The notes below the pieces were generated by a model. That model had not been told where the DNA came from and did not search any database. It worked only from the letters and a program-made list of their open reading frames with translations. Positions 13,075 to 53,031 of a stretch of DNA of 64,000 bases are shown here, piece by piece; position 1 is the stretch's first letter, and each line of letters opens with the position of its first letter. The stretch is from the IMG/VR virus record IMGVR_UViG_3300042482_000702, positions 124,001 to 188,000 of that record. One strand, written 5' to 3'. Made by a program: the position numbers and the translations under genes.

Positions 13075-14079
13075 CTACTCTTTTTCTTCTATCTCTTTCA
13101 AATCGTAATCACCATCTGTTCCGATGATGTTTTTCCAATATTCAGAGTATTCTTTTTTGTACTTCTCAATTGAAGCCTTTTCTTCTACTGTCTCTTTTCC
13201 TGCTAAAAATCCGTGAGGTGTTACAATAATTTTACCATCCTCGTAACCTAATCCATTGATGTGGTTTTTCATAACAGACACTTTAGTTCTTACAGCAAAT
13301 TTGATAGTTCTTTTGTCTTTAGTAGCCGTAATCTTTGTTGTTCCAGCACCTTTTTCATTTCCAAATCTAAATACTAATGAAGAGTTCAACCAAATCGCTT
13401 CTCCACCCTTAGCTTTAATTTTAGGTTGTCCGAATGGGTTATCCGGAAGTTCAACCCAAGGTTGGTTAACAATCACCAAAGTATTCTCATATTTGGAGTC
13501 GGATTTACGACTTCCCGATATTCTTTGGTTAATTCCCATACCAATTTTATCCGCTAACGCCGCCGCATTATGTTGTTTTCCACCCTTACCCTCAAAAGTC
13601 ATTTTACAAGGAACTGAACCAACAGAATCCCATAAAAATAATAAACTATAATCTAATTCGCCCTTCTCTTGAGCATCAAGTAAACTATTAATGTAATCGG
13701 TAATTTGTTCAATATAACTGAAGTTGTTATTAAAGATGTAGAACCCATCCCATTCTAACTCACCCGTCTCTTCATCAACCAATTCTTCACAATCAAAACC
13801 CATAAGTTTTGCGTGTTCAAATGACCATTTTTGTTCGGTAATGATGAATACTGGTAATATTTGTTTTTTCTGAGCATCAACCGCACATTTTACCAACGCA
13901 GTTGTTTTACCCGTATCGGAGTGACCCAAGAACATATTTAAATGTCCTATCGCTGGTCCCGGAATACCAACAGCATCCAAAAAGTCAGGACCTAAATCAA
14001 AAAACCTTTGTGGTTTGTATTTTGCAGATGTCGAGAATTTGTCCTTAATGGACTTAAAATCGTGTTTTTTAATCGCCAT
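13075..14079 (-). CDS. RecA/UvsX-like recombinase
   Basis: Walker A GHSDTGKTT, Walker B LFLWDSVGS, IVNQ, GG.A, KNH. Confidence 0.88.
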   Translation of the reverse strand: MAIKKHDFKSIKDKFSTSAKYKPQRFFDLGPDFLDAVGIPGPAIGHLNMFLGHSDTGKTTALVKCAVDAQKKQILPVFIITEQKWSFEHAKLMGFDCEELVDEETGELEWDGFYIFNNNFSYIEQITDYINSLLDAQEKGELDYSLLFLWDSVGSVPCKMTFEGKGGKQHNAAALADKIGMGINQRISGSRKSDSKYENTLVIVNQPWVELPDNPFGQPKIKAKGGEAIWLNSSLVFRFGNEKGAGTTKITATKDKRTIKFAVRTKVSVMKNHINGLGYEDGKIIVTPHGFLAGKETVEEKASIEKYKKEYSEYWKNIIGTDGDYDLKEIEEKE

Positions 14080-27741: not shown

Positions 27742-29679
27742 TTAAGCTTGCATTTGTTTTGTTCTAGACCCTGTTTTGCTACTTGTTAAATTATTATTTG
27801 GGTCTAATTTACCAATAGAATATATTGCTTGAACCATTTGTGGGTCTTTCAACGCCAATGCTAATTGAGCCGTGTCAATATTTGGATTGTTAGAATCTAT
27901 CTTAATATTTAAATTAACATTTGAATCAACCGTGTGTTTAGTGTTTGTTTCTGCTAACTGACTATTACCTACCCCAACCTTTTTTAAATCATCTTTATAT
28001 TGAGTTTCTAATTTTGTTGTGTTAACAACATTAGTCACATTAGTCACATTTGTTGTAGGATTATTCATATTATTAATTGCCTGTGTATTACCATTAACCT
28101 CATTGGATTTAAAAATTTCTTTTAATTCAGGTATAGATTCCATCTTTTCTTTTAACACTTTACCAGAATTAGTTAGTATTTCTAAAAATATATTTTGAGA
28201 TTTTGTTAAATTTTTCATTGATTCATCAGCCTTATCAACAGTATCTGTAAAGGCTGTTTTAGTTCCTTGTTGAATATTTTTACTTGCCGATTGTAAACTT
28301 TCCAAAACTTTAGACAATGAAGATTCTCCTTTAATAAACTTGTTGAAATCCTCTAAAACTCCCCCAATATTTTTATCAATTCCTTGTCTCATAGTTTTAA
28401 TAGAGGATGATTCAGCACTAAGAGTTTTTTCTAATTGTTTATACAATTCTCTCGGAGCATCTAATGCCGCTTGACCAACTTTTGTTCCCGCTATAGCTCT
28501 ACCAGTTCTATTTTTAATACTCTCCACCGAAGCATATATAGCTTCTTGTTGACTTAGTTGTGATTTTGCCACATCTTCAAGTGTTTTAGGTTGTTTAGAT
28601 AAAGCCTCAATATCAGGTTTACTTAATTCAGCAACACTTTTTGTCACTTTTTCACCTTTTTCACCTGTAAAACTAACTTCATATTTCCCCGTACCTTTAT
28701 TCATTTCCGCCATATTGGCAATCATAGTTCTTTGGTCTTCAGTTATATCACCGCCCGGAAACTTAATAGATTTCATTTTTTCCGCCAATTCAGCACTACC
28801 TAAAGCCATTTTAGCCAATTGTCCTACTGGTAATCCCATCGCGGATTCTATCTCCTTCATTTGACGTTTAGCACCCGGCATAATTTCAAAATTACCATCT
28901 TTATTCAGTCGAACAAATTGTTCACTCATTTTAGCAATTTGATTCTGAAGTTCTGCTGGGTCATTTTGAGCCAAATCCATTAATCGAAGAGGGTCTAATA
29001 AATCACCTTGAGCCACACCTAATCTTTGCATTGAAGCCGCCATTTTAATAGCTTCTTCAGGGTCAAACAATTTATCAGCAATACTTAAAGTACTTGACAT
29101 ATCAACTCTTAAACCGGTAGCTTGTGCCGCCATTTTTGCCAAACCATCAACACCATTAGCAAAATTAAATTTATTAAGAGCTGACATATTTTCAACAACT
29201 TGTTTAGAAACCGTTAAAGAATTAACACCTAAACTATTTGCCTTTAAAACAACTTTTTCCATTTGGGAAGATGCGTCATACATAGAAAATCCCGCATCTT
29301 TAAACCCTGATATAATACTATCAACGCCTTGACCTGAAACTTTTTGGGCCGCATATAATTTAGAGTAAGAATCCGAAGTAAGTATTAAATTTCTACCTAA
29401 AGTTGTTGCCGCTTTATTTTGTATATCAACAATTTCACTAAATTTACCACCTAAAATCGCAACACTAGTTGCCGCATCACCCATTGACGCTTTTATAGCA
29501 ATCAAATTTTGATTACTAACACCCATAGTTCTCATAACTTCAGATGCTGCGGTATCCACTTGATGTAAAATGTCTTTAATGTTTGCCGGGTCTAGATTAG
29601 TCCAAAAGGCATCACCAAGTTCTTTGATAGTTTGTTTGAATGAACCTATAATACCATCCTTATCGTCTATATCTGCCAT
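27742..29679 (-). CDS. Tape measure protein
   Basis: Ala/Met/Lys-rich alpha-helical protein in the canonical position after tube and chaperone. Confidence 0.7.
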   Translation of the reverse strand: MADIDDKDGIIGSFKQTIKELGDAFWTNLDPANIKDILHQVDTAASEVMRTMGVSNQNLIAIKASMGDAATSVAILGGKFSEIVDIQNKAATTLGRNLILTSDSYSKLYAAQKVSGQGVDSIISGFKDAGFSMYDASSQMEKVVLKANSLGVNSLTVSKQVVENMSALNKFNFANGVDGLAKMAAQATGLRVDMSSTLSIADKLFDPEEAIKMAASMQRLGVAQGDLLDPLRLMDLAQNDPAELQNQIAKMSEQFVRLNKDGNFEIMPGAKRQMKEIESAMGLPVGQLAKMALGSAELAEKMKSIKFPGGDITEDQRTMIANMAEMNKGTGKYEVSFTGEKGEKVTKSVAELSKPDIEALSKQPKTLEDVAKSQLSQQEAIYASVESIKNRTGRAIAGTKVGQAALDAPRELYKQLEKTLSAESSSIKTMRQGIDKNIGGVLEDFNKFIKGESSLSKVLESLQSASKNIQQGTKTAFTDTVDKADESMKNLTKSQNIFLEILTNSGKVLKEKMESIPELKEIFKSNEVNGNTQAINNMNNPTTNVTNVTNVVNTTKLETQYKDDLKKVGVGNSQLAETNTKHTVDSNVNLNIKIDSNNPNIDTAQLALALKDPQMVQAIYSIGKLDPNNNLTSSKTGSRTKQMQA

Positions 29680-29883: not shown

Positions 29884-30622
29884 AAAACTCCACCCCAAAG
29901 GTAATCTCGAAAGTTACCAAGTCTCCTGAAGGGGCTTTTACTGTTTGTTTTAAGTCTAATGATGGTTGGTTTTCTTTGATGAAATTACGAACATATTTTG
30001 AGTCCATAATTGGTAATGAATCAACAAATAATGAAATGTCCCCCGGATTTGAATTACCGTCAATTTCTACTATTTGTTTTGATAATCTCCAAGTAACAAC
30101 AGGAGCTGTTCTACCTACTGGGTAAGACTCCTCTAATGTTGAAAGATTAAGGATATCTCCGTAAGATAATGGTTTTAGTTTTACGGTATGCCCCGTTTTA
30201 GGTAGTTTTGTTGTAAACAACCCATTTTCATCTGGTTGGGCACTAGTTTTTTTAATGTTTAATTCATCAAGAATTACCGTATACGGGAATTGTTTAGATG
30301 TCTTTGGGTCAACTAAATTTACATTATATTCAGGACCAAACGAAGTATTTCTTAAGAAAATTAAAATAGCCTCAACATCACCATCTAATAACTCTTCAGG
30401 TTTTAAATCGTGCTCATAAATTTTATTTCTTAATAAAGTCATAATAATATTACTATTATTTTGAGACGCTCCCATCAAAAAATTCTCATCATTAGCTGTT
30501 AAATAACCAACTTTGATTGATTTCTTTTTTGATTTATAAAATATTCCACCAGAGGGTAACATTACTATATCGTGTGGTAATGAAAAATTTTCAGTTGCTG
30601 CGTTAATTAAATCTTGTTCCAT
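29867..30622 (-). CDS. Tail/baseplate assembly chaperone (T4 gp26-like)
   Basis: LPSGGIFY, LTANDE, LLDGDVEAILIFLRNTSFGPEY, LPKTG, D..Y.R, C-terminal FGVEFFRP; between tube and tape measure. Confidence 0.75.
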   Translation of the reverse strand: MEQDLINAATENFSLPHDIVMLPSGGIFYKSKKKSIKVGYLTANDENFLMGASQNNSNIIMTLLRNKIYEHDLKPEELLDGDVEAILIFLRNTSFGPEYNVNLVDPKTSKQFPYTVILDELNIKKTSAQPDENGLFTTKLPKTGHTVKLKPLSYGDILNLSTLEESYPVGRTAPVVTWRLSKQIVEIDGNSNPGDISLFVDSLPIMDSKYVRNFIKENQPSLDLKQTVKAPSGDLVTFEITFGVEFFRPFF

Positions 30623-30754
30623 ATAACTTATTGTTTATATATAATTATAGTTAACATCTTTTTTTAATAAACATTAAATATTTTAAAAAATAAAACCCAT
30701 ACATCATTTATATGACATATGGATTTCATTTTAATTATATAGATATTTTGAAAA

Positions 30755-31243
30755 TTAGTAAACTAATATACAACGGTCCATACGAATTGTTGCCGTAATA
30801 GACGCTAACGCATCGGTAGAATAACCTAATGAATCAAAATTAACATCACTTAAGAAAGAACCTTCTAAAATCCATTTTTCCACAACAACACCAGTTGGGT
30901 CTAACATCTCAAGGTCAATGTTTTTCTTATATCCGGCAGCATAACCCATTCTACCTGTTACAGATTCAGCACATAATCTAACCCACTCCATAAGAGCTTG
31001 AGATGCTGAAGGCCCGATTGGGTCTCTGAACTTAACATTTATGGTTCCCCAAGTAAATCTACCTGCAACATATGTTGAAGTATTTAGAAAAGGAATTTCT
31101 GTTGCGTTAATTGTAATATGTGGTCTAGCCGCGGTTTCAACAAACCATTCATTAATTCCCAAAGAAGATGGAAAACGAACAATAAACCTATTCTGTCTTT
31201 TAGGTTCATACGGTATGGGCATTTTCATTAATAAATCAGCCAT
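30755..31243 (-). CDS. Tail tube protein (gp19-like)
   Basis: YEPKRQNRF, AGRFTWGTI, YKKNIDLEMLDPTGVVVEKWILEG. Confidence 0.88.
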   Translation of the reverse strand: MADLLMKMPIPYEPKRQNRFIVRFPSSLGINEWFVETAARPHITINATEIPFLNTSTYVAGRFTWGTINVKFRDPIGPSASQALMEWVRLCAESVTGRMGYAAGYKKNIDLEMLDPTGVVVEKWILEGSFLSDVNFDSLGYSTDALASITATIRMDRCILVY

Positions 31244-31398
31244 TTTAAATTGTTTTTAATTTTATTTTATTTTATTGTTATTCTTATAAATATCCTCAAT
31301 TAAAATTTTTTCTATTTACTTTTAAAACTTTAAAAATTATAATTAAGCATAACTAACTAGATTTTTATTACTAGTTTTTTTTATTACTAGTTTTTTAT

Positions 31399-32220
31399 TT
31401 AATATTCTTTTTTTATTCCTCCTGCTGTTGAATAAGTTTTAATTATGTTTTCTGGTTCTTTTTCAAAATGTTTTTTTACTACATCTACATTTTTTATATC
31501 ATCATCTGAAAATCCTACTTTAGGTATAAAATAATTGCTTATCTTATTTTTTAAAAATGCTTTTTTCTGGATATGATTAGAAACTTTTTTAACATATTCT
31601 ACAAATTCTTTTAACGCCTTAATTTTACCTTCTTCTGGGTTGACAGCAGAACCCTCACCAAAAGTCACTGGGTAAAATTTACATAAATTTAAATATTCCC
31701 TAATCATCTCACTTTTAGAAATTTCTTCTTCATCAGCTAAGTCTCTATATTTTTCTAAATTTTTTATTAATTCTTCAGAATCAATTCCATTAAAATTAGA
31801 AACAATATAATTATAACAACCCTCTTTTAGTACTGACGGAGTATGTCCTCTAGCAGTCACGATTGAAAAAATTGACCCGTTGTTAATTGCTTCAGCAAAA
31901 TCAGGCCAAGCTGGTCCTGGTTTAGCTAACATAGCGTCAACAATAAATTGTTTATCACCTTTTATACCAAAATATCTAAATGGTTCGTCGGCAAACCCAA
32001 CAATTTTATGTCCATCATATTCAAATGGCTCTTTACCAATTTGTTCTCTATATTCAGCAAAATCTTCAGTTGACATACCTACCTCATCACCATCTTCATC
32101 TTTTAATATGATTTTAGTTGGCATAGATACAATATTGTCGTCCCAATCAAATGCATAGTATTTTTCATCAGGGGCTCCTGTTTCATCAATACCTTCTATT
32201 AATTTTCTATTTTTTAACAT
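31399..32220 (-). CDS. HAD-superfamily phosphatase-like protein
   Basis: Motif I FDWDDN, motif II IVTARG, Lys in GKIKA, motif IV FSDDD..N. Confidence 0.7.
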   Translation of the reverse strand: MLKNRKLIEGIDETGAPDEKYYAFDWDDNIVSMPTKIILKDEDGDEVGMSTEDFAEYREQIGKEPFEYDGHKIVGFADEPFRYFGIKGDKQFIVDAMLAKPGPAWPDFAEAINNGSIFSIVTARGHTPSVLKEGCYNYIVSNFNGIDSEELIKNLEKYRDLADEEEISKSEMIREYLNLCKFYPVTFGEGSAVNPEEGKIKALKEFVEYVKKVSNHIQKKAFLKNKISNYFIPKVGFSDDDIKNVDVVKKHFEKEPENIIKTYSTAGGIKKEY

Positions 32221-32282: not shown

Positions 32283-35200
32283 TTATATATTCTCAAAAGA
32301 AGCTCCGGTTGGAGTAATATAGAATGTGATATCTATAAATTCTAATGATTTGGTTGGTTTGATATAAATCTTACCAGTCATTTGATTTCTGTCTAAATCA
32401 GCAGCATCTGACGATACTGTTACACGGAAATCATATAAACCTCTATCTCTTCTGATAGCGTCCAAAATAGGGTTAACAGCGTCCAAGAAGTCTTGTCTTA
32501 CTTTAGCATCGTTTTGTTCAAACAGTAATCTTACAGATACCGCAGAAATCAATTTACGAGCTTGAAGTAATAATCTTCTAACATTGATTCTATCTAAAGC
32601 CGATTGTCTTATTTGAAGAGTTTTATTACCCCAAATTACAGTACCAACATCAGAGAAAGTAGCAATTGGGTTAATACGACCTTGATAAAGTGTGTCTCTA
32701 TCTTCTTGGGTTAGTTTACGTCTCGCTTTAACCGCATTTACAATACCTCTTGTGTAACCCGCCGCAGCGAACCAAGGGAAAGCAATGTTATCAGTTAATG
32801 CTAAATTTCTCGTAACCTCAGCCGTTGCCGGTAAGTAGATTTGAGTATTGTTAACACTATCTCTTGTTAATACCCAAGGGTAGTAAGTAGCCGTGTAGTT
32901 TGAATCAACACCTATTTGGTCTAAATTATCGACAGCTCGTTGAGGGTAAATTAAATCTGATTGGTCTCCGGTAGAAGGTACAAACATATTATAATCAGGT
33001 GTTGTACAAATATACAACGAATCCGCTCTATCGTTCTCAATCATATCAATAGCACTTTCAACTAAATCTGAATTGTTAAGATAATCAATTCCAGGTGTTA
33101 CAAAAACATTGATGTTAACCGCCTCAGGATTAGAAAATGTTCTTTGTCCTAATTTATATGCGTAATAATCGGTGTTAGCCCAATCTTCACTATTATCGCC
33201 AACAGAAATTTGTTTAAATGCTCCCCAACCTGTTGCCGCAGGATATTTAATTGATACCGCCGCTCCGTGTAAGTAACCGTTTCTACCTAAAACAAATGTA
33301 TCACCATTTGTTCTATATTCTCTATAGATATCCCACCCGTCAAAACCTCCTTGAACAAGGAAACTAAATTTACGAGAATATAGTCTATAATAAGGACTTG
33401 ATTCACTATCAGGGTCTTTTGTAAATGTTGCATCTCCAACATAAAATGCTGGTGTACCACTTGTAGTAAAAGTATTAGGAATTAAGATACTATTAGCATC
33501 TATATCCATATGGAAACCTTTAGTTCTAGTTGACCACTCATCACCTGTAGTATCATTACCAACATCTAAAGGTAATTGTTTTCCTTTATAACCAAAGAAA
33601 TTAGCATCAATACCAATACTATCAGATATACCAAGATAAGTTCTTCTAACATTGTCACCACCACTTCTAGTTGAATCGTCAGCACCTGACGCTAAACCAA
33701 ATGGGGGGTTATAAACAACCTCACCAGGATAATCGTATTTAGTTTTTATAATTGGGAATGGTGATTTAACACCTGCATAATCTCTTGAATTAAATCCTAA
33801 AAATCCACAAGGAAGAGCGTCTATAGGTGCATCTTCATTAAGTTCTAACATAACATATTTAGAATTCAATTCATATTCTCCATCTATAGAACCAACTTTC
33901 TTAGCTATAAATGAATTATCGTTAGGATTCATATTACAATTTGTAAATTTCTCAAGAACAACAGGGGCACTATCAGAATCATAAAAATCTCTAACTAATA
34001 CATCAAAAGTTCCGTTATTAAATGAAATGTTTGCTATAGATATTTTAACTTCTGTGTTAGCGGAGTCACCATCAGCTATTGTTGTAAATTTAAATAAGTT
34101 ATAAACTTTATTACCTCTTAATTCAGACACAACCCAAGGAGATGTCGGTGATTGATATTTTTCTAAATACCAAGCAATGGATGTTGCGTCGGTTTGTTGT
34201 CTTGCATCAGGTAATGCGGTTAAATTACAATTTAAACCTCTAATAAATCCTTTTCTATAACCATATGTTAATAATGTTTGATATCTTTCTTCTACAAACA
34301 ATGGTACTGTTGTTCTTGGTTTTGCAAAATTAGAAGAACCAAATACTTTACTAATATATTTAGAATCAGAATTAGATAACGAAGTTTCAAAGAAAAATTC
34401 TTCACCATCTTTATTTGTAACATTTAATCCAAAAGTAGAGAATGGATTTTTAGTAACTCCTGAATAAGTTGATGAACAATCCATTGAAACGTCTGTTAAA
34501 CCTGAAACTTCATAAACCGCACCGTCATCACTACCATAAGTCGCGATACCTCTTGAACGAAGTGTTGCAATAACTAAATCATCAAAATCGGTATAAGCAG
34601 TTCCTGAATAAACATATATTTCACCTGTAATAACCCCCAAATAACAATTTATCAATCCCCCCTCATTAGGCACACCTATGTTACCAACAACAACCGGATT
34701 ACAAACAGATTCAACCATGACAGTAACAATCCAATTTGTTGGGTTACTTCCATCTTCAGATAATAATTGATATGTTAAACTTCCACTTGAAAAATTATTA
34801 ACGGTTTCCCCACTTATTTGAGTAGAAAGTCCAATCGAAACATATCCATATGGAACACAAGTATCGAACCCACAAACGATTTTTGATAAATCAGTCCCAA
34901 CAGGTACTACAACATTTATTGTGTTGGTATTATAGTTAATACTACCAATTGTGGTTGTACCTATATCATCAACAAGAATTCTACCGAGACTACCTCCATT
35001 GATAAAAATTATATCACCAATTTGATATCCGGTACCAGGTGTATTAATCGTTACATCAGTTATGACACCTGCATCAACAGATATATCAACCGTTAATCCT
35101 TCACCAAAACCATCGGTTGTTGTTGTATAACCATTACCACCAACATATCCTGTTCCTCCTGTGAGTCCATCCAACAATGATACATATCCACCAACAGTGA

Positions 35201-36077
35201 ACCCATAGAAAGTTGAACAATCTGATGTTGTAGATATATTTGATATCTCTTCAACAATACCATAAAAAGATGAACCACTATATGAACCCCCTCCATTATT
35301 ATCAAATAATGAATAATACCAAGGGTCATTTTCTGGTGCTGTGTAATCCGCTAAATCTGAACTAACATTATTAACACCAAAAACATTTGTTGAAGCAGTA
35401 TATGATGTTAATTCTGAATAACTATCTGCTGGGATTGTACCAAAATAAGATATACCAGAATATGATTCGTCAAAATTAATTATTGAATTAAATGCCAAAT
35501 TATTAATATCTGAACGAAGTGTTGAGATACTACCATTAAATAATTCATATGGTAAATCAATTTTATTTAATAAAAATTCAGGTAAATCTGTCTCAATCAT
35601 AGTGATAGATGATATATCATTATCACAACCCGAAAATATGTAAGAATACACATATCTTTCATATTCTTCACACACAGATTCACATCCTGGTGTTAAAGTT
35701 AGACAATTAAAATCGATTGTTGTTGAATCAACATTTGCTTTTGTCGTAATTGACCAAGATGGTCCCGCATCATAACCTGAAAGTCCTAAAACTCTGGTTA
35801 CAAATAATTGATTAGATTGTTGTAAATACGCTTTAGCAATATAAGACGCCTCATATTTTGGTATTTGTGTGTTTATAAATTTTTCAGGGGAAGTTCCTCC
35901 AAAATACGCTGAGAATTCATCAAAATTTCGTATAAAAATAGGTTCGAAGGCTGGACCTTTTAAGGTTTCACCAACAATACCTAATGTAGTTACTCCCACA
36001 CTTTGGGCTACGAAACTTAAATCAACTTCAGAAGTATATACTCCAGGAGATACGAATACTTTACTGTTTGATGCCAT
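32283..36077 (-). CDS. Contractile tail sheath protein with large insertions (1264 aa)
   Basis: N-terminal FVSPGVYTSEVDLS...GETLKGP; C-terminal PWFAAAGYTRG, INPIATF, WGNKT, RINVRRLL, FEQND, IKPTKSLEFI. Confidence 0.95.
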   Translation of the reverse strand: MASNSKVFVSPGVYTSEVDLSFVAQSVGVTTLGIVGETLKGPAFEPIFIRNFDEFSAYFGGTSPEKFINTQIPKYEASYIAKAYLQQSNQLFVTRVLGLSGYDAGPSWSITTKANVDSTTIDFNCLTLTPGCESVCEEYERYVYSYIFSGCDNDISSITMIETDLPEFLLNKIDLPYELFNGSISTLRSDINNLAFNSIINFDESYSGISYFGTIPADSYSELTSYTASTNVFGVNNVSSDLADYTAPENDPWYYSLFDNNGGGSYSGSSFYGIVEEISNISTTSDCSTFYGFTVGGYVSLLDGLTGGTGYVGGNGYTTTTDGFGEGLTVDISVDAGVITDVTINTPGTGYQIGDIIFINGGSLGRILVDDIGTTTIGSINYNTNTINVVVPVGTDLSKIVCGFDTCVPYGYVSIGLSTQISGETVNNFSSGSLTYQLLSEDGSNPTNWIVTVMVESVCNPVVVGNIGVPNEGGLINCYLGVITGEIYVYSGTAYTDFDDLVIATLRSRGIATYGSDDGAVYEVSGLTDVSMDCSSTYSGVTKNPFSTFGLNVTNKDGEEFFFETSLSNSDSKYISKVFGSSNFAKPRTTVPLFVEERYQTLLTYGYRKGFIRGLNCNLTALPDARQQTDATSIAWYLEKYQSPTSPWVVSELRGNKVYNLFKFTTIADGDSANTEVKISIANISFNNGTFDVLVRDFYDSDSAPVVLEKFTNCNMNPNDNSFIAKKVGSIDGEYELNSKYVMLELNEDAPIDALPCGFLGFNSRDYAGVKSPFPIIKTKYDYPGEVVYNPPFGLASGADDSTRSGGDNVRRTYLGISDSIGIDANFFGYKGKQLPLDVGNDTTGDEWSTRTKGFHMDIDANSILIPNTFTTSGTPAFYVGDATFTKDPDSESSPYYRLYSRKFSFLVQGGFDGWDIYREYRTNGDTFVLGRNGYLHGAAVSIKYPAATGWGAFKQISVGDNSEDWANTDYYAYKLGQRTFSNPEAVNINVFVTPGIDYLNNSDLVESAIDMIENDRADSLYICTTPDYNMFVPSTGDQSDLIYPQRAVDNLDQIGVDSNYTATYYPWVLTRDSVNNTQIYLPATAEVTRNLALTDNIAFPWFAAAGYTRGIVNAVKARRKLTQEDRDTLYQGRINPIATFSDVGTVIWGNKTLQIRQSALDRINVRRLLLQARKLISAVSVRLLFEQNDAKVRQDFLDAVNPILDAIRRDRGLYDFRVTVSSDAADLDRNQMTGKIYIKPTKSLEFIDITFYITPTGASFENI

Positions 36078-36171
36078 TTTTTTTGTTGTTTTTATTTGTT
36101 AATTTATTTTTATTGATAAATATTCTGAAAAAAAACAAAAGACTTTACTTTGTGCGAACTATTTATATTTT

Positions 36172-36202
36172 AGGTAGACTTTTTTCTACCTTTTTTCTAC
36201 CT
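36172..36202 (+). promoter_or_regulatory. Putative operator: one AGGTAGA plus two TCTACCT boxes upstream of the RHH gene
   Basis: AGGTAGA at 36172-36178; TCTACCT at 36185-36191 and 36196-36202 (11 bp period), ending at the ATG. Confidence 0.5.
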
Positions 36203-36367
36203 ATGGATAAAGACATTAAAAAGATTAAAAATTTGAAAATTTCAGTTGAAACTCACGAAATTCTTAAAACTTATTGCGAAAAAAACGGAATCAAAATGTA
36301 TAGATTCTTGGAAAGATTAATTGTCGAAAAGTGTTCCCCTAAAAAGGATATCTACGGTGAGGACTAA
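36203..36367 (+). CDS. Ribbon-helix-helix (Arc/CopG-like) DNA-binding protein, 54 aa
   Basis: KNLKISVETHEILKTYCEKNGIKMYRFLERLI fits the beta-alpha-G-alpha RHH pattern. ATG at 36203 is preferred over 36068, which would overlap the divergent sheath start. Confidence 0.75.
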   Translation: MDKDIKKIKNLKISVETHEILKTYCEKNGIKMYRFLERLIVEKCSPKKDIYGED

Positions 36368-37389
36368 TTTATGTGGTTTTTGAATATTATTAACCCCTCT
36401 TTAGTTTCGTCATTTTTTATCACAATAAATTTTAAAACATCATTTGTGTTGATTTGAATATGAGATAAATCAGACCCATAAAATTCACTATTAATATACA
36501 CATCAAAGGTGTGAATATTGGTTTTTTTATGTAAATCTAAATTAGTTGAATAATTAAAAAGTTGTGAAATAATATTATTTTTTTCGTTAAATAAAACAGT
36601 AAGTTCAGGATTAATTACTTTTGGCTTTTTCTTTGTTGTTTTATTGTCCAATTCAACCACTTGTAATAATCGAGAAATTGCCGGAGAAACCTCAAATTCA
36701 TTTTCATCAATTAAAAATCCAAGTACTGTAAAATCATAACTTTGGATGTAATATTTTCTTTTTTCAAGTTCCATTACTGATTCATCTGAAATGTTTCCCA
36801 TAACAATTGGAATGTAATGTCCTTTGATAGATGTATATGCTTGTTTTGATGCAAACTTTCCAAGTACATTTTTATTGAACTCGTTTAATTCCCTCATTCT
36901 ATTACAGATAATTTTCACAACAAAAGAAATATCGACAGGAACCGGTTGAGGAATCTTATAAACATCTGACCCGTGTCTTTGTCCGTCCCAAGTTGGTACT
37001 TGAGCGTAAAAGAATTGTTTTCTATTTGGGATGTTATAAACTATTGCAGGGTTAGTGCCATATTTAACTTCAGGTACTCTAACTACGGTTATAAATGGGG
37101 TCTCAACATTTTTATCTATATTTTGTAAATTCCAAGTTTCAGTAAACTGTGACCAATTTTGAGTTGTTACCAAAATATCAACCATTGATATAGTTTTACC
37201 CTCAACAACGGTTTTTAAATCATTTTTAACAAAATCCAAAAACCCTCTATCTAAATCCGCATGTAAAATTGACTTCGGTAAAAAAGTCCCATCTTTGTTT
37301 ATCTTATCTAAAAGTTCTTCCCTTCTCGGTAAAAGAGTTTTTGATTGAGTTAACGGAATATGTTTTTTTATTTTATTTGGTAATGGCAT
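36364..37389 (-). CDS. Tail completion / sheath terminator-like protein
   Basis: PFITVVR, IPQPVPVDISF, YDFTVLGFL pattern; upstream of the sheath in the neck-tail cluster. Confidence 0.55.
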   Translation of the reverse strand: MPLPNKIKKHIPLTQSKTLLPRREELLDKINKDGTFLPKSILHADLDRGFLDFVKNDLKTVVEGKTISMVDILVTTQNWSQFTETWNLQNIDKNVETPFITVVRVPEVKYGTNPAIVYNIPNRKQFFYAQVPTWDGQRHGSDVYKIPQPVPVDISFVVKIICNRMRELNEFNKNVLGKFASKQAYTSIKGHYIPIVMGNISDESVMELEKRKYYIQSYDFTVLGFLIDENEFEVSPAISRLLQVVELDNKTTKKKPKVINPELTVLFNEKNNIISQLFNYSTNLDLHKKTNIHTFDVYINSEFYGSDLSHIQINTNDVLKFIVIKNDETKEGLIIFKNHIN

Positions 37390-37391
37390 CT

Positions 37392-37826
37392 TTATTTTGT
37401 TATAAAAATTTTATTTTTTAAATTAATCATCTCCACTTCATTGGCATGAAATATAGGTTCTTCGGTGTCTTTCATAACATAAGAATTATATTTGTATGGA
37501 TTGTAGGTGACAATATTATTGTTAGGTTCTTCTGGTAAATTCTCACAAGGGAACTCACAATAATCCATTAAAGTTCCAATAACAAATGAATGTACATTTT
37601 TACTTTTTTCTCTAACCACTCTTTCTCTACCACCTTGTCTAACTCTAAATTCGACATCTTCTAATTTAACATAATCGGAGTGTGAAATTAATCTACCCTT
37701 GTATGTTACCGAAAAGGTGTGTTTATGTAGGTTATAATAAACCATTACTTTTTTACCAATATAATCGTCATCTGAATAAATTTCAAATAATCTTTTTGCT
37801 TGAGATTCTGTTATTAATATTTTCAT
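37392..37826 (-). CDS. Phage hypothetical protein with MKILITE leader
   Basis: VYYNLHK...FRVRQGGRERV..EK.KNVH.F.IG...YNPY core; N-terminus MKILITESQ. Confidence 0.75.
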   Translation of the reverse strand: MKILITESQAKRLFEIYSDDDYIGKKVMVYYNLHKHTFSVTYKGRLISHSDYVKLEDVEFRVRQGGRERVVREKSKNVHSFVIGTLMDYCEFPCENLPEEPNNNIVTYNPYKYNSYVMKDTEEPIFHANEVEMINLKNKIFITK

Positions 37827-38215
37827 TAGTCGGCTACGATTGTTTTTACTGGTAAATCAAAGTTATCTTTAAACCATTCTTTCATAGGTTCTATCCAATA
37901 ACTACCAAACATATTGGTTAATTTTTCATAATCATTAACAATTAATATCGGTGTCTTTTCTTTAAAAGATTTACTCGAAGGTTCATCGCTATAATATTCC
38001 TTTTGAATATATACAAAAGCAACACCATCTTGGTCGTAATCACCTTCATATATATGATAAAAATACTCTCGTATATATGGGTTTTCCTCATCATCATATT
38101 CATCATCATTCCATGTGGTTGGATGAAAATAATCTATGTTACTTACATCAAAAGTATCTTCAAGATAATTATATATTGTTCTATATAATTTATTTTCTGT
38201 TATTAATATTTTCAT
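37826..38215 (-). CDS. Acidic aromatic-rich hypothetical protein, paralog B
   Basis: Tandem paralog of 38215-38601; TAATG stop/start overlap. Confidence 0.8.
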   Translation of the reverse strand: MKILITENKLYRTIYNYLEDTFDVSNIDYFHPTTWNDDEYDDEENPYIREYFYHIYEGDYDQDGVAFVYIQKEYYSDEPSSKSFKEKTPILIVNDYEKLTNMFGSYWIEPMKEWFKDNFDLPVKTIVAD

Positions 38216-38601
38216 TAGTCGGCTACGATTGTTTTTACGGGTAATTTATAATTATCTTCGAACCATTTTTTCATAGGGTCTTTCCAATAATTTCCAAACA
38301 TACTTGACAAATTTTGCCAATCATGTCCATTAACTGATAATATTGGTGATTTATCTTTCAAAGGGTTTGATGAAGGTTCATTACTGTAGTATTCATAAGA
38401 ATAATAACTAAAAACCCACTTTTCATCCTCACCCCACGTATCGTAATAAAAATCTGTAATATATGGATTTTCAATCTCACTCATTTCCTCATCATCCCAA
38501 ACTTCAGGATGAGACGGTTCTAAATTAGATATGTCAAAAGTATCTTCAATATAATTATATATTGTTCTATATAATTTATTTTCTGTTATTAATATTTTCA
38601 T
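38215..38601 (-). CDS. Acidic aromatic-rich hypothetical protein, paralog A
   Basis: Shares MKILITENKLYRTIYNY and LPVKTIVAD termini with its neighbour. Confidence 0.8.
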   Translation of the reverse strand: MKILITENKLYRTIYNYIEDTFDISNLEPSHPEVWDDEEMSEIENPYITDFYYDTWGEDEKWVFSYYSYEYYSNEPSSNPLKDKSPILSVNGHDWQNLSSMFGNYWKDPMKKWFEDNYKLPVKTIVAD

Positions 38602-39113
38602 TATAGACCTCTAAATTCATTATTCATTACCGGTGAAGCAATAATACTACGATAAAAAGGTTTATACCCCCCTATTGTGTGTTTATTATCGGAAGTTACC
38701 CTTCCATCATTATTAACCGTATAATATCTTACTTTATCTTCCGTTTCATAATATCCGATGTAATCACCAAAATTAATATCTACTTCCAAATTATCTAAAT
38801 CTCTCTGATATACCGACACTTTAAGATTGCCCGGCTCAAATTGGTCAATTCTTGATGTCCCAACAAATTTGTTTTCAGGTGGTAAAATTTGAACATATCC
38901 TTTGAACTCAACTGGTGGTAAGAATTTCACACCATCAGATACAGTCTCACCATAGACAGAGTCAGTCTTGGTCTTATATCTATCAACACGATATAGAACT
39001 AATGTAAAGTTCATATCTCCGTGTAACCATTCAGTTCCAAAATCTTGTTCTAACTTGAAATCTTCAGCTCCAAAGAATTTACCTATTCTTGTAATTGGTA
39101 CTTTATTATTCAT
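38601..39113 (-). CDS. Head completion / neck protein (gp14-like)
   Basis: YRVD...DSVYGE...KFLPPVE...GD pattern and cluster context. Confidence 0.55.
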   Translation of the reverse strand: MNNKVPITRIGKFFGAEDFKLEQDFGTEWLHGDMNFTLVLYRVDRYKTKTDSVYGETVSDGVKFLPPVEFKGYVQILPPENKFVGTSRIDQFEPGNLKVSVYQRDLDNLEVDINFGDYIGYYETEDKVRYYTVNNDGRVTSDNKHTIGGYKPFYRSIIASPVMNNEFRGL

Positions 39114-39435
39114 AATTTTTTCGTCTTTTGTATTCTGATTCCGAGCGAGTACCTGAATTATTAATTATAACATTAATACCAAAATAATCTTTTATAGTCT
39201 TTTGTATTTCACGATTCCACCCACTTCTGTAATTTACAGAAACTTCACGACCCTGATATGAAACTTTCAGATATTTACTATCGTCAGGGACAACATATGT
39301 TACCTTCATATAATATTCTTCACCAGTATCATCAGTTGGTTCTAATGTATAAATAAGTTCAGACACACCATTAGGTTTAATGTGTTTAATCATTTTATTT
39401 ATTAATTTGTCTAATATCTCTTGTCTCATTCTCAT
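39106..39435 (-). CDS. Hypothetical protein
   Basis: 109-aa ORF preceded by the TATTTATC motif and overlapping the next start. Confidence 0.7.
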   Translation of the reverse strand: MRMRQEILDKLINKMIKHIKPNGVSELIYTLEPTDDTGEEYYMKVTYVVPDDSKYLKVSYQGREVSVNYRSGWNREIQKTIKDYFGINVIINNSGTRSESEYKRRKNYE

Positions 39436-39485
39436 ATGTTGATAAATATTATAAAATATGTTATATTTCTATTAAAAGAATAAAA

Positions 39486-41303: not shown

Positions 41304-42842
41304 ATGAAAAAGATTGAAAAAAAAATCAATCTCATAACAGAAGAACTAAAAAAAGTTGAAACCCACGAAAATCAACAAATGTTCATTAATGAGATGAAAA
41401 AAATAGGGATAGAAAAATTACCCTACGCCTATTCAGCACTAAAACAATTTATTGATGCTGAAACAATGGATTACCATTACAATAAACACTATAAAGGATA
41501 TGTTGATAAACTAAATTCCGCTCTTAAAAAGAAAGATTATGGTGATTTAGAATTAGAAGAAATTATTAAATCAATAAGTAGATTTGATAAGACAATTAGG
41601 AACAATGCCGGAGGAGCCTTTAACCACGCATTGTTTTGGAAAATGTTAACTCCAAAAAAACAAACACCAAATGGTGAAATTATTAGGCAAATTAAAAAAG
41701 ATTTTACTACCTTTGTCAAGTTTAAAAATAAGTTTGAGGAAATTGCTCAAGAAAAATTTGGTTCAGGTTGGGTTTGGTTAGTTTTAACAAAACGAAATAC
41801 CTTAAAAATCGTAACCACAGAAAATCAAGACAATCCTCTTATGAATGTTATAGATGATGGTGGTTATCCAATACTAGGATTAGATTTATGGGAACACGCA
41901 TATTATTTAAAATATAGAAACAAAAAAAATGACTATGTTAAGAATTTTTGGAAATGTGTTAATTGGGAATTTGTTAATAAACTATATACAATGAGAATTG
42001 AAACTAAATTAAATGAAAGTTTAAATTTTAAGTCTGTTATTTCTGAAGGTAAGTCTGAAAGATGTGGTAGAGAAGAGAACGAAGCTATTCGTATGGTTTT
42101 TAATATTAACCCAAAAATTAAACAAATTTTTATGGAAGGTATTAACCACATCCTTAAAGAAGTTTTTCCGGATAACTATTATGGGTATGGTGAATACGCT
42201 AAAGGTGAAATGTCTGGTGTGTATGATTTAGAAAGAGATGGTCGTTCTGTATTAAATAAATTAAACACAAACTATAGTTGTTTCTGTGTTCTTCTTAACG
42301 ACACAAATCAAGTTTTAAAATCTACAAATTTACCTGAAATTAAAATTGTTGGTTTAAAACCATTGGAACAAATTGAAGAAACTAAAAAATTACTTATTTT
42401 CTTACACGAATATAAATTTAGAATATTCAAACAAACCTCCGCAACATTTCAAAACATTATGAAAGTTTTAACCCAAACAGATACTTGGGGTCAATCTCGT
42501 GAAGATAAAACTATTGAGATTTTAAAGAAAAAATTTGGAAAAGATAATGTTAACGCCATCGGTAAATTAGGTAGTAAAGCTGATATGATTGGTGGTATAG
42601 ATTGTGAAGTTATTATTAATGGTAGAAAATTAAGTAGTCAAATTAAACCTTTTGGAAGTATTGAAACAACCGGTGAAGAAATTACTGTTATTGGTTCAGG
42701 AGCCGTTAAAAAATACTATACAGATTGGTTAATTTTCACTAGAAATAATAAAGATGTTTTAATTTTCAGAAATAAAAATTCAAAAATTGTTAATGGACAA
42801 TATGTTTTTCCTAAAGGAGATTTAATTTATTCATTAAATTGA
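41304..42842 (+). CDS. Mn/Fe superoxide dismutase fused to a C-terminal PD-(D/E)XK-like domain
   Basis: SOD ligands intact: LPY...HYNKH, NNAGGAFNHALFW, FGSGWVWL, NQDNP, DLWEHAYY. About 280 extra residues with G..RE...D...GID...QIK. Confidence 0.9.
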   Translation: MKKIEKKINLITEELKKVETHENQQMFINEMKKIGIEKLPYAYSALKQFIDAETMDYHYNKHYKGYVDKLNSALKKKDYGDLELEEIIKSISRFDKTIRNNAGGAFNHALFWKMLTPKKQTPNGEIIRQIKKDFTTFVKFKNKFEEIAQEKFGSGWVWLVLTKRNTLKIVTTENQDNPLMNVIDDGGYPILGLDLWEHAYYLKYRNKKNDYVKNFWKCVNWEFVNKLYTMRIETKLNESLNFKSVISEGKSERCGREENEAIRMVFNINPKIKQIFMEGINHILKEVFPDNYYGYGEYAKGEMSGVYDLERDGRSVLNKLNTNYSCFCVLLNDTNQVLKSTNLPEIKIVGLKPLEQIEETKKLLIFLHEYKFRIFKQTSATFQNIMKVLTQTDTWGQSREDKTIEILKKKFGKDNVNAIGKLGSKADMIGGIDCEVIINGRKLSSQIKPFGSIETTGEEITVIGSGAVKKYYTDWLIFTRNNKDVLIFRNKNSKIVNGQYVFPKGDLIYSLN

Positions 42843-51394: not shown

Positions 51395-52252
51395 CTATAA
51401 CGTTATAATTTTTTTTAATAGATTATTTTCTTGGAAATATCTTTTTTTAATTTCTCTTAATCCAATTATTTTTTGTTGATATATTTCATCACTATTTTCA
51501 ATTATAGTTTTTAATAATTGTTCTATAGAATCAACATCATTTATATCATCAATTAAAATATAACCATCTTCCGGGTATATTTCTTTAATATTTTTACAAC
51601 CAAAATAAATAGGTATAGTATCGGTTAATATGTTGTCATAAAATTTTTCAGTAATCCAATTTTTTTCATATGAATTTTCAATTGAAATATTAAATTTATA
51701 ATCTACTAATGCGTCTTTACGTTTTGGGCTAATATTGCCATCATAAACATCTATTCCGTTTATTTCTTTAATTCTTTCTAAAATATTAACTCTTTGAGGG
51801 TATAAACAAGTTCCTCCATAATCAGTATTTAATCTTGTGATTGAACTAGATATTATCTTAGTTTTATTAAATGTTGATTTTAATAGATTATCGTAACACC
51901 AAAAATCTAATGTGTCAACCCAAGGGCCTCTACCACCATAAAAAGTATGTGCAATAGATTCTTTAAAATTACCAACATATAATTCTTTTGAAAATCCACA
52001 AATAACAGTATCACTTATAAAATGTTTTTGATGTGTACCAATCCAGGAAGGTTCGTGGGGAAATACAAATGATTTAGAATTTGGTTTAATCTCAACATTA
52101 GTGTAATTAAAAAAAACTATAGTATCGTAAGAGTCGTCATAAACAAACTCTATATTAGTCAAATCAATTTCCGGTGTTTTAAACTGCTTAAGTAATCTTT
52201 CTGTTAAATTTTCCGAAGAATCGTAATTTGCGGATATTTTTATTTTTTTCAT
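51395..52252 (-). CDS. GT10-family (alpha-1,3/4-fucosyltransferase-like) glycosyltransferase
   Basis: K..ALVDYKFNISIENS....WITEKFYD......PIYFG. Start probably ATG 52252, an ATGA overlap with the upstream stop. Confidence 0.85.
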   Translation of the reverse strand: MKKIKISANYDSSENLTERLLKQFKTPEIDLTNIEFVYDDSYDTIVFFNYTNVEIKPNSKSFVFPHEPSWIGTHQKHFISDTVICGFSKELYVGNFKESIAHTFYGGRGPWVDTLDFWCYDNLLKSTFNKTKIISSSITRLNTDYGGTCLYPQRVNILERIKEINGIDVYDGNISPKRKDALVDYKFNISIENSYEKNWITEKFYDNILTDTIPIYFGCKNIKEIYPEDGYILIDDINDVDSIEQLLKTIIENSDEIYQQKIIGLREIKKRYFQENNLLKKIITL

Positions 52253-53031
52253 CGTTTTATATTTTCCCAATTATTATAGTTAAAACTAACTTTAAAAACC
52301 CCAGATTCATTACCAAAACCTAATTCACCAACATTATATCCGCTTATTAATGCTGACACACCAATTTCAAATGCCTCCATATCAAAAGTAATAACGTTAT
52401 TCGGTTGTTGAGTTTCAAATAGAGTACAAAATTTTTCAAATTCATTACACATTATTGGTAATTTTTCATTATTTTTAATTAACAATATGTGTTCACTTGG
52501 TAAAGACGCTTGTCTCCATTCAGGGTTAATACCGTAAAATGTAAATTTATCGTCAAATAATGCTTTATAAGTTCCGTTTTTAATTGTTTCTAAATATTGA
52601 TTTTCAGCCCATTCATAAGTCCTATTTGCCAATAAAACTAACATATCAAAACCATTACTTTCCCACTCATTTATTTTAGAATCAATAACATCTGTATTAA
52701 CTTCACTATTTAATCCCGCATCACAATCTAAATAAAGAACCCAATCATATTTTTGATTGATATCTTTAATTGCTGAAAATTTTAAAAGTTGATTAAACGC
52801 ACCAACGTGAGTTTTATGGTTTTCTAATTTATTTTCAGTAATAATAACACGGTTAGGGTTATTATTATACTCATCGTCAAAATGTGATGGAGCGTTTGTT
52901 GTTACCATAATGTCATATGGTGTTTTTGTTAAAACATCATTAATTAATCTTTTAGCAAAAGTTGTGTAAATTTCCGACCCTTCTCTTTCTGAATTAACAT
53001 ATGATATTGCCGATACTAATATATTTTTCAT
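52249..53031 (-). CDS. Putative GT-A fold glycosyltransferase
   Basis: K......YDWVLYLDCD DxD motif; inside the glycosylation cluster. Confidence 0.65.
   Translation of the reverse strand: MKNILVSAISYVNSEREGSEIYTTFAKRLINDVLTKTPYDIMVTTNAPSHFDDEYNNNPNRVIITENKLENHKTHVGAFNQLLKFSAIKDINQKYDWVLYLDCDAGLNSEVNTDVIDSKINEWESNGFDMLVLLANRTYEWAENQYLETIKNGTYKALFDDKFTFYGINPEWRQASLPSEHILLIKNNEKLPIMCNEFEKFCTLFETQQPNNVITFDMEAFEIGVSALISGYNVGELGFGNESGVFKVSFNYNNWENIKR

What the first reader, a model, noticed from the sequence alone, without database searches (positions are those of the whole stretch)
37392..38601. Shared MKILITE leader on unrelated cargo: possible capsid-targeting / prohead-protease signal
Seen: three consecutive genes begin with the identical DNA ATGAAAATATTAATAACAGAA (MKILITE), although the 37392 protein is otherwise unrelated to the other two. 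Similar hydrophobic-x-E motifs open the SOD fusion (NLITEE, FINE), the 15134 protein (ILEE, YITE) and the HAD protein (KLIEG). Established: the T4 prohead protease cleaves after (L/I)-x-E and T4 internal proteins carry short N-terminal capsid-targeting peptides. Inference: a portable tag that routes diverse proteins into the head for injection.
Basis: inference. Interest (0 to 1): 0.6.

Follow-up and report, generated by a model that had tools for sequence, protein, structure and literature searches.

The report
Shared N-terminal tag on phage proteins
About twenty unrelated small proteins of this uncultured T4-like jumbo phage start with the same short peptide (M-K-I-L-I-T-E), which copies the cutting site of the phage's own capsid-maturation protease, so it is probably an address tag that loads them into the phage head, although packaging and cleavage have not been shown.

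Summary
Three adjacent minus-strand genes start with the identical 21 nt, with about 0.04 copies expected by chance. A1 and A2 are paralogs. B shares only its first ~20 residues with them, and its cargo is a complete Phage_L5_gp82 domain.

The leader M-K-φ-φ-φ-(T/N/S)-E opens at least 21 of ~400 ORFs in this 322-kb genome. ITE is the most enriched N-terminal tripeptide (p≈2e-19). Three related 270–320-kb genomes carry 17–18 copies each.

Selection acts on the peptide: Thr6 and Ser8 use synonymous codons, and Ser8 uses both codon families. E7 is the only invariant leader residue besides Met1 in the B family, and the only invariant N-terminal residue in the A family. In AlphaFold models residues 1–6 are an unstructured overhang.

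The genome encodes a T4 gp21-type prohead protease. Its capsid protein has a conserved F-L-I-N-E|A site where T4 gp23 has F-L-T-E|A, and packaged T4 Alt begins M-E-L-I-T-E.

The local DNA identity comes from cassette duplication or recombination in a variable slot of a structural operon. A protease-cleaved, capsid-targeting propeptide is the best explanation (~0.5) but is unproven.

The parts
38581..38601 (-). Leader copy 1: first seven codons (MKILITE) of A1
   Evidence: Exact match to the 21-mer; start of the ORF
38195..38215 (-). Leader copy 2: first seven codons of A2
37806..37826 (-). Leader copy 3: first seven codons of B
38215..38601 (-). A1, 128 aa, acidic (net charge about -14), ITENK-type leader. 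Its stop overlaps the next start (TAATG).
   Evidence: member of the A family (alignment A4)
37826..38215 (-). A2, 129 aa, paralog of A1 (58% identity). In the model residues 1-6 are coil and helix 7-21 is part of a confident alpha/beta fold.
   Evidence: AlphaFold model, pLDDT 88, pTM 0.80; no PDB match
37392..37826 (-). B, 144 aa: leader (residues 1-14), linker (15-23), then cargo
37422..37757 (-). Cargo domain of B (residues 24-135): Phage_L5_gp82, PF25735, also phrog_586
   Evidence: Pfam E 7.5e-31, 107 bits against a cut-off of 27; phrog_586 E 6.6e-32; homologs in 380 cultured phages all lack the leader
38195..38238 (-). 44-nt junction repeat, copy 1: last 23 nt of A1 plus the leader of A2
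   Evidence: Identical to 37806-37849
37806..37849 (-). 44-nt junction repeat, copy 2: last 23 nt of A2 plus the leader of B
38601..39113 (-). Conserved 170-aa gene that forms the upstream border of the variable cassette slot
   Evidence: Present next to the slot in all 12 relatives inspected; no family assignment
36364..37389 (-). Conserved 341-aa gene that forms the downstream border of the slot and lies next to the sheath gene. A T4 gp15-like identity is only a lead.
   Evidence: Synteny; atlas score 0.80 to gp15 tail-sheath-stabiliser clusters; PF16724 finds nothing in the genome
32283..36077 (-). Tail sheath gene (1264 aa), downstream on the same strand
   Evidence: Phage_sheath_1 and Phage_sheath_1C, phrog_23; TATAAATA at 36160-36167 upstream
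39442..39448 (-). TATTTAT box 6 nt before the first gene of the co-directional string (39106-39435). The same box precedes head and tail genes and many leader genes.
41304..41408 (+). 35-residue N-terminal extension of the SOD fusion, containing KINLITE and MFINE
   Evidence: The SOD domains start at residue 36

Best explanation
MKILITE is the local copy of a genome-wide N-terminal leader, M-K-φ-φ-φ-(T/N/S)-E, usually followed by (S/N)-(Q/K)-φ-x-x-φ-φ. This T4-like jumbo phage and its close relatives attach it to about 20 otherwise unrelated small proteins.

The most likely function is a short propeptide recognised by the phage's gp21-type prohead protease, which would cut after Glu7. The propeptide may also serve as, or form part of, a signal that holds the protein in the prohead core, like the capsid-targeting sequences of the T4 internal proteins and the MELITE propeptide of T4 Alt. 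On this reading the tagged proteins are candidate internal head proteins ejected into the host with the DNA.

The exact DNA identity of the three copies in this window is a separate, local effect. The genes sit in a variable cassette slot of a structural operon. There, cassettes are duplicated, lost and exchanged with breakpoints at the leader (the TAATG stop/start overlap), and neighbouring leaders are homogenised.

Shown here: the leader family, its modularity, peptide-level selection, the invariant Glu, the presence of the protease, the resemblance to the MCP site, and the cassette dynamics. Inferred: cleavage, packaging and ejection.
For: (1) Enrichment and position. 18 to 22 ORFs of ~400 start with the leader. 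The strict core occurs 16 of 18 times directly after Met-Lys. ITE, IITE and LITE are the top N-terminal words.

(2) Peptide-level selection. Thr6 uses all four ACN codons and Ser8 uses both AGY and TCN. Distant relatives keep the peptide with only 6-11 nt of identity.

(3) Modularity. B's cargo is a complete PF25735 domain that is leaderless in 380 cultured phages. m314649 is the leader plus a full phrog_7595 domain. In relatives the same B cargo carries MKVVITE, MKIIINE, MSRLINE or MSKLIKE..MMGLINE, with or without a zinc ribbon.

(4) E7 is the only invariant leader residue besides Met1 in 17 B homologs, and the only invariant N-terminal residue in 14 A homologs.

(5) Residues 1-6 are coil in both models, and a helix starts at E7.

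(6) The genome has Peptidase_S77 (E 8e-25) and a gp23-type MCP. The MCP carries (F/H/Y)-L-I-N-E|A, conserved in 58 relatives and followed by a variable spacer. This parallels T4 gp23 F-L-T-E65|A. The leader core φ-L-I-T/N-E mimics that site.

(7) T4 Alt starts MELITE, and six of seven T4 cleaved core proteins have L/I-x-E within 10 residues. Reviews state that gp21 cuts after L/I-X-E, that Alt loses a very short N-terminal propeptide, and that the IP propeptides are portable capsid-targeting sequences.

(8) Context. The cassette lies in a co-directional string with the sheath gene. The TATTTAT box found before scaffold, protease, portal and sheath genes precedes 10 of 21 leader genes against 58 of 347 others (p 0.0016).

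(9) Copy number is conserved: 17-18 per genome in three relatives, 0 for the control pattern.
Against: There is no direct evidence of cleavage or of presence in virions. The phage is uncultured and no proteome was available.

The generic L/I-x-E motif is common: 20% of non-core T4 proteins in the sampled stretch have it near the N-terminus.

Residues after the presumed cut (S/N-Q/K-φ-x-x-φ-φ) are also conserved, and in the A family helix 7-21 is part of the fold. The conserved element is therefore not simply a removable propeptide.

Twenty or more packaged proteins would far exceed the T4 precedent.

Some cargos are not obvious head passengers: a region like the DNA-binding part of homing endonucleases, and a peptidoglycan-binding domain on a looser leader.

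The tagged proteins are not biased towards basic pI as T4 IPII and IPIII are (median pI 5.6). The comparison with the T4 IPs rests on my own knowledge.

The timing argument depends on reading the TATTTAT box as a structural-gene promoter, which is an inference.

The protease-leader complex prediction gave no verdict.
Confidence: 0.5

Rival explanations
1. The leader is a portable docking peptide for a different common partner or destination, not the capsid. Candidates include a phage or host chaperone, a host target shared by many takeover proteins, a membrane or assembly site, or a tag for regulated degradation. The resemblance to the protease site would then be coincidental.
For: All the evidence for modularity, peptide-level selection and clade-wide conservation fits this equally well. 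The conserved amphipathic stretch after E7 looks like a binding helix. The cargos are heterogeneous in size and charge.
Against: It does not explain why the one invariant residue is a Glu two positions after an invariant hydrophobic residue. It does not explain why the core matches the phage's own MCP maturation site, why the same layout occurs in T4 core proteins and Alt, or why the genes share an upstream box and an operon with virion genes.
Confidence: 0.25
2. There is no tag function. The shared N-terminus reflects common ancestry within a fast-evolving multigene family of small proteins, plus local tandem duplication and gene conversion that copied the start of A onto B.
For: A1 and A2 are tandem paralogs. 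The junction repeat is 44 nt, and neighbouring leaders are homogenised within loci, including a shared G variant in L023. In the A fold helix 7-21 is integral. The A2 model matches eight uncharacterised proteins of one uncultured phage. There are faint profile hits to two further small tagged proteins.
Against: B's cargo belongs to a family that is leaderless in Mycobacterium and Bacillus phages. The same holds for the phrog_7595 cargo. With the leader removed, B and all ESQY-type proteins show no similarity to the A profile. Leaders are kept at the peptide level where the DNA has diverged. Different leaders that share only φ-φ-x-E replace one another on the same cargo. Gene conversion cannot maintain copies scattered over 300 kb and across genomes.
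Confidence: 0.15
3. The conserved element is a nucleotide-level signal, and the peptide is a by-product. The signal could be a translation-initiation or coupling context at TAATG overlaps, an AT-rich unstructured start region, or a recombination or homing site.
For: There is exact DNA identity in this window and in four close relatives. Stop/start overlaps (TAATG) occur at the junctions. The codons are AT-rich. Cassette breakpoints coincide with the leader.
Against: Synonymous variation at Thr6, Glu7 and especially Ser8 (AGY and TCN codons) with the amino acids kept. In L039 and L041 only 6-11 nt are identical while the peptide is conserved. Many leader genes are not in overlapping junctions.
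Confidence: 0.07

Closest known systems
[quoted passage not shown]
   Same: A short N-terminal peptide shared by otherwise unrelated proteins, ending in φ-x-E, in a phage with a gp21-family protease. The genes sit in a variable locus. [quoted passage not shown]
   Different: About 20 tagged proteins per genome rather than a handful. The presumed removed part is 7 residues rather than 10-19. I saw no sequence similarity to the T4 CTS beyond the general layout; the T4 CTS sequence was not retrieved with a tool. There is also a conserved stretch after the Glu. Function is untested here.
N-terminal propeptide of T4 Alt (MELITE...)
   Same: A near-identical core (L-I-T-E) at the extreme N-terminus. 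Alt is packaged in the head, ejected with the DNA, and loses a very short N-terminal propeptide to gp21. alt.-1 shows that the leader is duplicated along with gene fragments in T4 too.
   Different: In T4 this is a single protein, and no targeting role has been shown for that propeptide. Here a whole family carries it.
Propeptides of inner-body and ejection proteins in phiKZ, 201phi2-1 and SPN3US, cleaved by gp175/gp245-type proteases
   Same: Jumbo phages that package dozens of proteins, many as paralog families, processed after Glu by a diverged gp21 homolog.
   Different: The motif there is S/A/G-x-E with long propeptides that often carry several sites, and there is no single short shared leader. 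That is a different phage lineage; here the head module is T4-type.
Cargo-loading peptides of encapsulins (from my own knowledge, not tested here)
   Same: A short portable peptide that loads diverse cargo into an HK97-fold shell.
   Different: It is usually C-terminal, is not removed by a protease, and is not part of a virus.

Membership tests
T4-type gp21-cleaved N-terminal propeptide / capsid targeting sequence | The phage encodes a gp21-family (Peptidase_S77) prohead protease and a T4-type head module | tested here: met
   PF03420 E 7.9e-25 at genome 242155-242646; Gp23 PF07068 E 1.1e-64; scaffold and portal-like genes adjacent
T4-type gp21-cleaved N-terminal propeptide / capsid targeting sequence | The peptide lies at the extreme N-terminus (first ~10-20 residues) and ends in L/I-x-E | tested here: met
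   I/V-(T/N/S)-E at residues 5-7 in all members; E7 invariant
T4-type gp21-cleaved N-terminal propeptide / capsid targeting sequence | The peptide is shared by proteins whose mature parts are unrelated | tested here: met
   BLASTP and hhalign on cargos; PF25735 and phrog_7595 cargos
T4-type gp21-cleaved N-terminal propeptide / capsid targeting sequence | The site resembles bona fide substrates of the same phage's protease | tested here: met
   MCP F-L-I-N-E|A is conserved in 58 relatives, and the protease N-terminus keeps G-I-L-I/V-E. The MCP cut itself is inferred by analogy with T4 gp23.
T4-type gp21-cleaved N-terminal propeptide / capsid targeting sequence | The propeptide is actually removed by the prohead protease | not testable with these tools
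   No proteome is available. The complex prediction gave no verdict.
T4-type gp21-cleaved N-terminal propeptide / capsid targeting sequence | The tagged protein is present in proheads or virions, and the peptide is sufficient for packaging | not testable with these tools
   The phage is uncultured. No virion proteomics was found even for the nearest cultured relative.
T4-type gp21-cleaved N-terminal propeptide / capsid targeting sequence | Expression when proheads assemble | tested here: inconclusive
   The cassette lies in a co-directional string with the sheath gene. The TATTTAT box is shared with head and tail genes, odds ratio 4.5, p 0.0016. TATAAATA precedes one leader gene. The promoter classes are inferred, not measured.
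Phage_L5_gp82 (PF25735), for the cargo of B only | Match to the family model above the curated cut-off over the whole domain | tested here: met
   107 bits against 27, profile positions 5-114 of 120, residues 24-135
phiKZ-type inner-body propeptides | S/A/G-x-E cleavage motif and a phiKZ-type head module | tested here: not met
   The motif here is φ-x-E with I or V at the first position. The head module is T4-type.

The most novel reading that the evidence does not exclude
An abundant, uncultured clade of T4-like jumbo phages (probably infecting Bacteroidota) uses a seven-residue address tag that mimics its capsid maturation site to load twenty or more different effector proteins into the head for co-injection. 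The tag-encoding DNA doubles as the recombination joint through which effector cassettes are duplicated and exchanged. A cultured relative (Flavobacterium phage immuto) runs the same scheme with different tags, so the principle would be general in this branch and directly testable.
Probability: 0.4. Interest if true: 0.8.

Novelty: new variant of a known kind. Interest (0 to 1): 0.62.

Why it matters
If the tag works as proposed, it identifies from sequence alone the set of proteins that a large, environmentally abundant phage group injects into its host. No cultured member of this group exists. Injected proteins are where anti-defence and takeover functions concentrate in T4 (the IPs and Alt). 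It would extend the capsid-targeting principle from a few T-even proteins to a repertoire of about 20 per genome. It would also show how such repertoires diversify, through cassette exchange at the tag. And it would provide a minimal tag for packaging foreign proteins into phages of Bacteroidota. The prediction is sharp: mature N-termini should begin at residue 8.

Tried and rejected
- Protease (alignment A3) with residues 1-40 of B (alignment A2) in complex prediction: score 0.00, 'no answer'. It counts neither for nor against.
- Foldseek of the B model against PDB: no match. The same for A2 against PDB: no match. BFVD gave only uncharacterised proteins.
- Pfam on 26 other tagged or loosely tagged proteins: no families apart from SOD, a PG_binding_1 domain and weak LRR/EF-hand hits. 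PHROGs: only phrog_7595, HNH-like and two weak hits.
- Flanking genes: no PDB sequence match. The gp15-like lead from the atlas (0.80) was not confirmed by PF16724.
- Megablast of 15 kb of the window against cultured phages: no match.
- Literature: no paper holds MKILITE, MKIIITE or MKLIITE. An earlier search was swamped by 'melitensis'. No virion proteomics for phage immuto.
- Toprim- or Rossmann-like beta1 strand as an explanation of MK-φφφ-TE: rejected, because residues 1-6 are coil in both models and no such family matched.
- Signal peptide or lipoprotein signal: rejected on sequence. The hydrophobic run is only 3 residues and is followed by Glu, and there is no Cys.
- Co-variation between leader and MCP site across clades: only anecdotal. 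Immuto's KQILSE leader resembles its MCP site KQIVSE|A, but in just 2 proteins, and immuto's other two leader classes do not resemble its MCP site.
- Not used: the large representative protein search, sequencing-run search and read laying.

Full report
**The observation**

The 21-mer ATGAAAATATTAATAACAGAA occurs exactly three times in the 64-kb window. All three copies are on the minus strand and each forms the first seven codons of one of three consecutive ORFs. Shuffles give a mean of 0.04 copies.

- A1 (38215-38601, 128 aa) and A2 (37826-38215, 129 aa) are paralogs, 58% identical.
- B (37392-37826, 144 aa) resembles them only over its first 20 residues.
- The identical stretch at the A1/A2 and A2/B junctions is 44 nt, because it also includes the last 23 nt of the preceding A gene. 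The stop and start codons overlap as TAATG.

**Scale**

The window lies in a single 322,477-bp viral contig of 31.5% GC. The leader is genome-wide.

- In a crude set of 400 ORFs, 18 start with M-K-[ILVF]-[ILV]-[ILV]-T-E. A profile search and a relaxed pattern raise this to 21-22.
- The strict core occurs 18 times in 100,651 residues, and 16 of those directly follow Met-Lys.
- An unbiased count of words in residues 2-15 puts ITE first among tripeptides (26 proteins, 12x, p 1.7e-19). IITE is enriched 79x, LITE 55x and ESQY 255x.
- A looser core, φ-φ-[TSN]-E, is 4.9x enriched at residues 1-12. About 50 ORFs carry it near the N-terminus against about 17 expected. They include further recurrent leaders such as MNLQENxxRIxxMMGxI-x-E.
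- Three complete or nearly complete relatives (318, 309 and 272 kb) hold 17-18 copies of the leader pattern each, and none of a reversed control pattern.

**What is under selection**

Selection acts on the peptide, not the DNA.

- Across the 18 genes Thr6 uses ACA, ACC, ACG and ACT. Ser8 uses AGT, AGC, TCT, TCC and TCA.
- In more distant relatives adjacent leaders share only 6-11 nt while the peptide is kept.
- In an alignment of 17 B homologs whose N-terminal extensions differ widely, the only invariant leader residues are M1 and E7.
- In 14 A-family members E7 is the only invariant residue in the N-terminal part.
- AlphaFold models of B (pLDDT 70) and A2 (pLDDT 88) both leave residues 1-6 as coil and start a helix at residue 7. 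In B this is a short separate helix followed by a low-confidence linker. In A2 it is part of the fold.

**Modularity**

- B's cargo (residues 24-135) is a complete Phage_L5_gp82 domain (PF25735, E 7.5e-31). Its 380 homologs in cultured Mycobacterium and Bacillus phages align only from about residue 21-30. Two that I inspected start directly at the domain.
- A second tagged protein is the leader plus a full phrog_7595 domain. A third carries a region like the DNA-binding part of homing endonucleases.
- With the leader removed, only four of 21 tagged proteins match the A-family profile. Two show faint hints. B and all ESQY-type members show nothing.
- Some small ITENK-type proteins may still be remote paralogs, because the A2 model matches several uncharacterised proteins of one uncultured phage.

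**The cassette slot**

In relatives, the interval between a conserved 170-aa gene and a conserved 341-aa gene next to the sheath holds one to four leader genes in different combinations.

- The B cargo is always present, but its N-terminal extension varies: MKILITE, MKVVITE, MKIIINE, MSRLINE or MSKLIKE...MMGLINE.
- Some versions have a CxxC...CxxC zinc ribbon inserted between leader and cargo.
- In close relatives neighbouring leaders are DNA-identical over 20-22 nt even on unrelated cargos. In L023 both neighbours share the same A-to-G variant, which points to recombination or conversion at the leader.

This explains the exact repeat in the window as a local consequence of cassette duplication and exchange, separate from the function of the peptide.

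**Link to head maturation**

- The genome has a T4-type head module: Peptidase_S77 (gp21 family, E 8e-25), a gp23-type MCP, an acidic scaffold and a portal-like gene.
- In 58 relatives the MCP keeps (F/H/Y)-L-I-N-E|A at residues 56-61. A variable spacer follows, and then the conserved FETVVFPIVRR. The protease N-terminus keeps G-I-L-(I/V)-E.
- The T4 record shows gp23 ...F-L-T-E65|AEIGG and gp21 MNEPQLLIE. Alt starts MELITE. gp67, gp68, gp22 and gp24 also have L/I-x-E within ten residues of the start.
- Reviews state that gp21 cuts after L/I-X-E. They also state that N-terminal propeptides range from 7 residues (Alt) to 65 (gp23), and that the IP propeptides are portable capsid-targeting sequences.
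- The leader core φ-L-I-T/N-E thus mimics this phage's own presumed maturation site. One variant (MSRLINE) is identical to it over four residues.

**Expression context**

- The cassette lies in a co-directional gene string with the sheath gene.
- An ATATTTAT box, 17x enriched upstream of ORFs, precedes scaffold, protease, portal, sheath and large virion genes. It precedes 10 of 21 leader genes against 58 of 347 others (p 0.0016).
- TATAAATA, the T4 late-promoter consensus, precedes the protease, several structural genes and one leader gene.
- These promoter assignments are inferences.

**Limits**

- Nothing here shows cleavage or packaging.
- The bare L/I-x-E rule also hits 9 of 45 non-core T4 proteins.
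- Residues after the Glu are conserved too.
- The tagged proteins span pI 4.1 to 9.8.
- The complex prediction gave no verdict.

**Wider pattern**

The nearest cultured phages by MCP (about 41% identity), Flavobacterium phage immuto and Microcystis phage Mel-JY01, lack this leader. Immuto has its own shared leaders on unrelated cargos: MENFDLKKFLVEN (5 copies), MKKQILSEQF...AGIITES (2 copies) and MKKSxLxxxIKE (4 copies). One of these, KQILSE, resembles immuto's own MCP site KQIVSE|A. This is only a hint of co-variation, but it offers a cultured system for a test.

**Verdict**

The 'portable tag' reading is well supported. The capsid-targeting and protease-signal function is the best-supported mechanism, at about 0.5, and remains to be shown. 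It is a new variant of a known kind, the T4 capsid-targeting sequence and Alt propeptide.

Noticed in passing
G000 genome-wide; ORFs listed: TATCTTTG / TAnnTTTG is about 18x enriched upstream of ORFs (21-38 genes, mostly non-structural). It matches the Bacteroidota -7 promoter box as I know it. Together with the nearest cultured relative being a Flavobacterium phage, this suggests a Bacteroidota host.
   Followed up: partly
window 39442-39448 (-), and 14 ORFs genome-wide: The ATATTTAT(A) box is 17x enriched upstream of ORFs. In 14 cases TATTTAT is separated from the ATG by exactly 4 nt, which would leave almost no 5' leader on the mRNA if it is a -10-like element. Unexplained.
   Followed up: partly
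G000 28023-28586, 30505-30972, 30974-31747, 319096-319989; L065:9935-10390: A second recurrent N-terminal leader, MNLQENxxRIxxMMGxI(T/N/S)E, sits on different proteins. A related version replaces the MKILITE leader on the B cargo in locus L065.
   Followed up: partly
L048:9833-10390, L070:9827-10384, L055:450-995, L041:9845-10375: Some B homologs have a CxxC...CxxC zinc-ribbon module of about 30 residues inserted between leader and cargo.
   Followed up: no
window 41304-42842 (+): A 512-aa protein: a 35-residue leader-like extension, a complete Fe/Mn superoxide dismutase (residues 36-226) and about 285 further residues of unknown function.
   Followed up: partly
window 36068-36367 (+), hairpin 36172-36191: A small opposite-strand ORF (99 aa from the first start codon) lies between the 341-aa gene and the sheath gene, with a terminator-like hairpin inside the interval. 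TATAAATA at 36160-36167 on the minus strand lies upstream of the sheath gene.
   Followed up: no
window 52249-53031 (-) and 13075-14079 (-): There are two internal copies of the strict core: RVIITENK at about residue 62 of a 260-aa protein, and VFIITEQK at about residue 78 of a 334-aa protein. These might be internal processing sites after longer propeptides.
   Followed up: no
G000 316676-317767 (L004:4677-5768, -): A leader-bearing 363-aa protein matches HNH/homing-endonuclease PHROGs only over their DNA-binding part (profile 188-410 of 607). No nuclease domain was detected.
   Followed up: no
W01 (NC_055915.1) 1803, 103806, 117631, 118632, 125241; 25061, 111675; 81525, 102294, 113188, 123355: The cultured Flavobacterium phage immuto has three shared N-terminal leaders of its own on unrelated cargos, each containing φ-φ-x-E. 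One copy lies directly beside its prohead protease gene.
   Followed up: partly
G000 79695-80129 and 80163-80588: Adjacent ORFs share a Pro/Thr-rich stretch (..PPVTSGTTPVTSAAT..) after different N-termini. One of them carries the leader variant MKIIINESQY.
   Followed up: no
window 32283-36077 (-): The tail sheath is unusually long at 1264 aa. Only about the last 280 residues match sheath families, so most of the protein is unassigned.
   Followed up: no
The prohead protease has more than 7,700 clusters of relatives (clustered at 90% identity) in the metagenome protein collection; the 120 best hits listed are 83-100% identical. More than 600 IMG/VR contigs also carry it. This uncultured phage clade is very abundant.
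   Followed up: no
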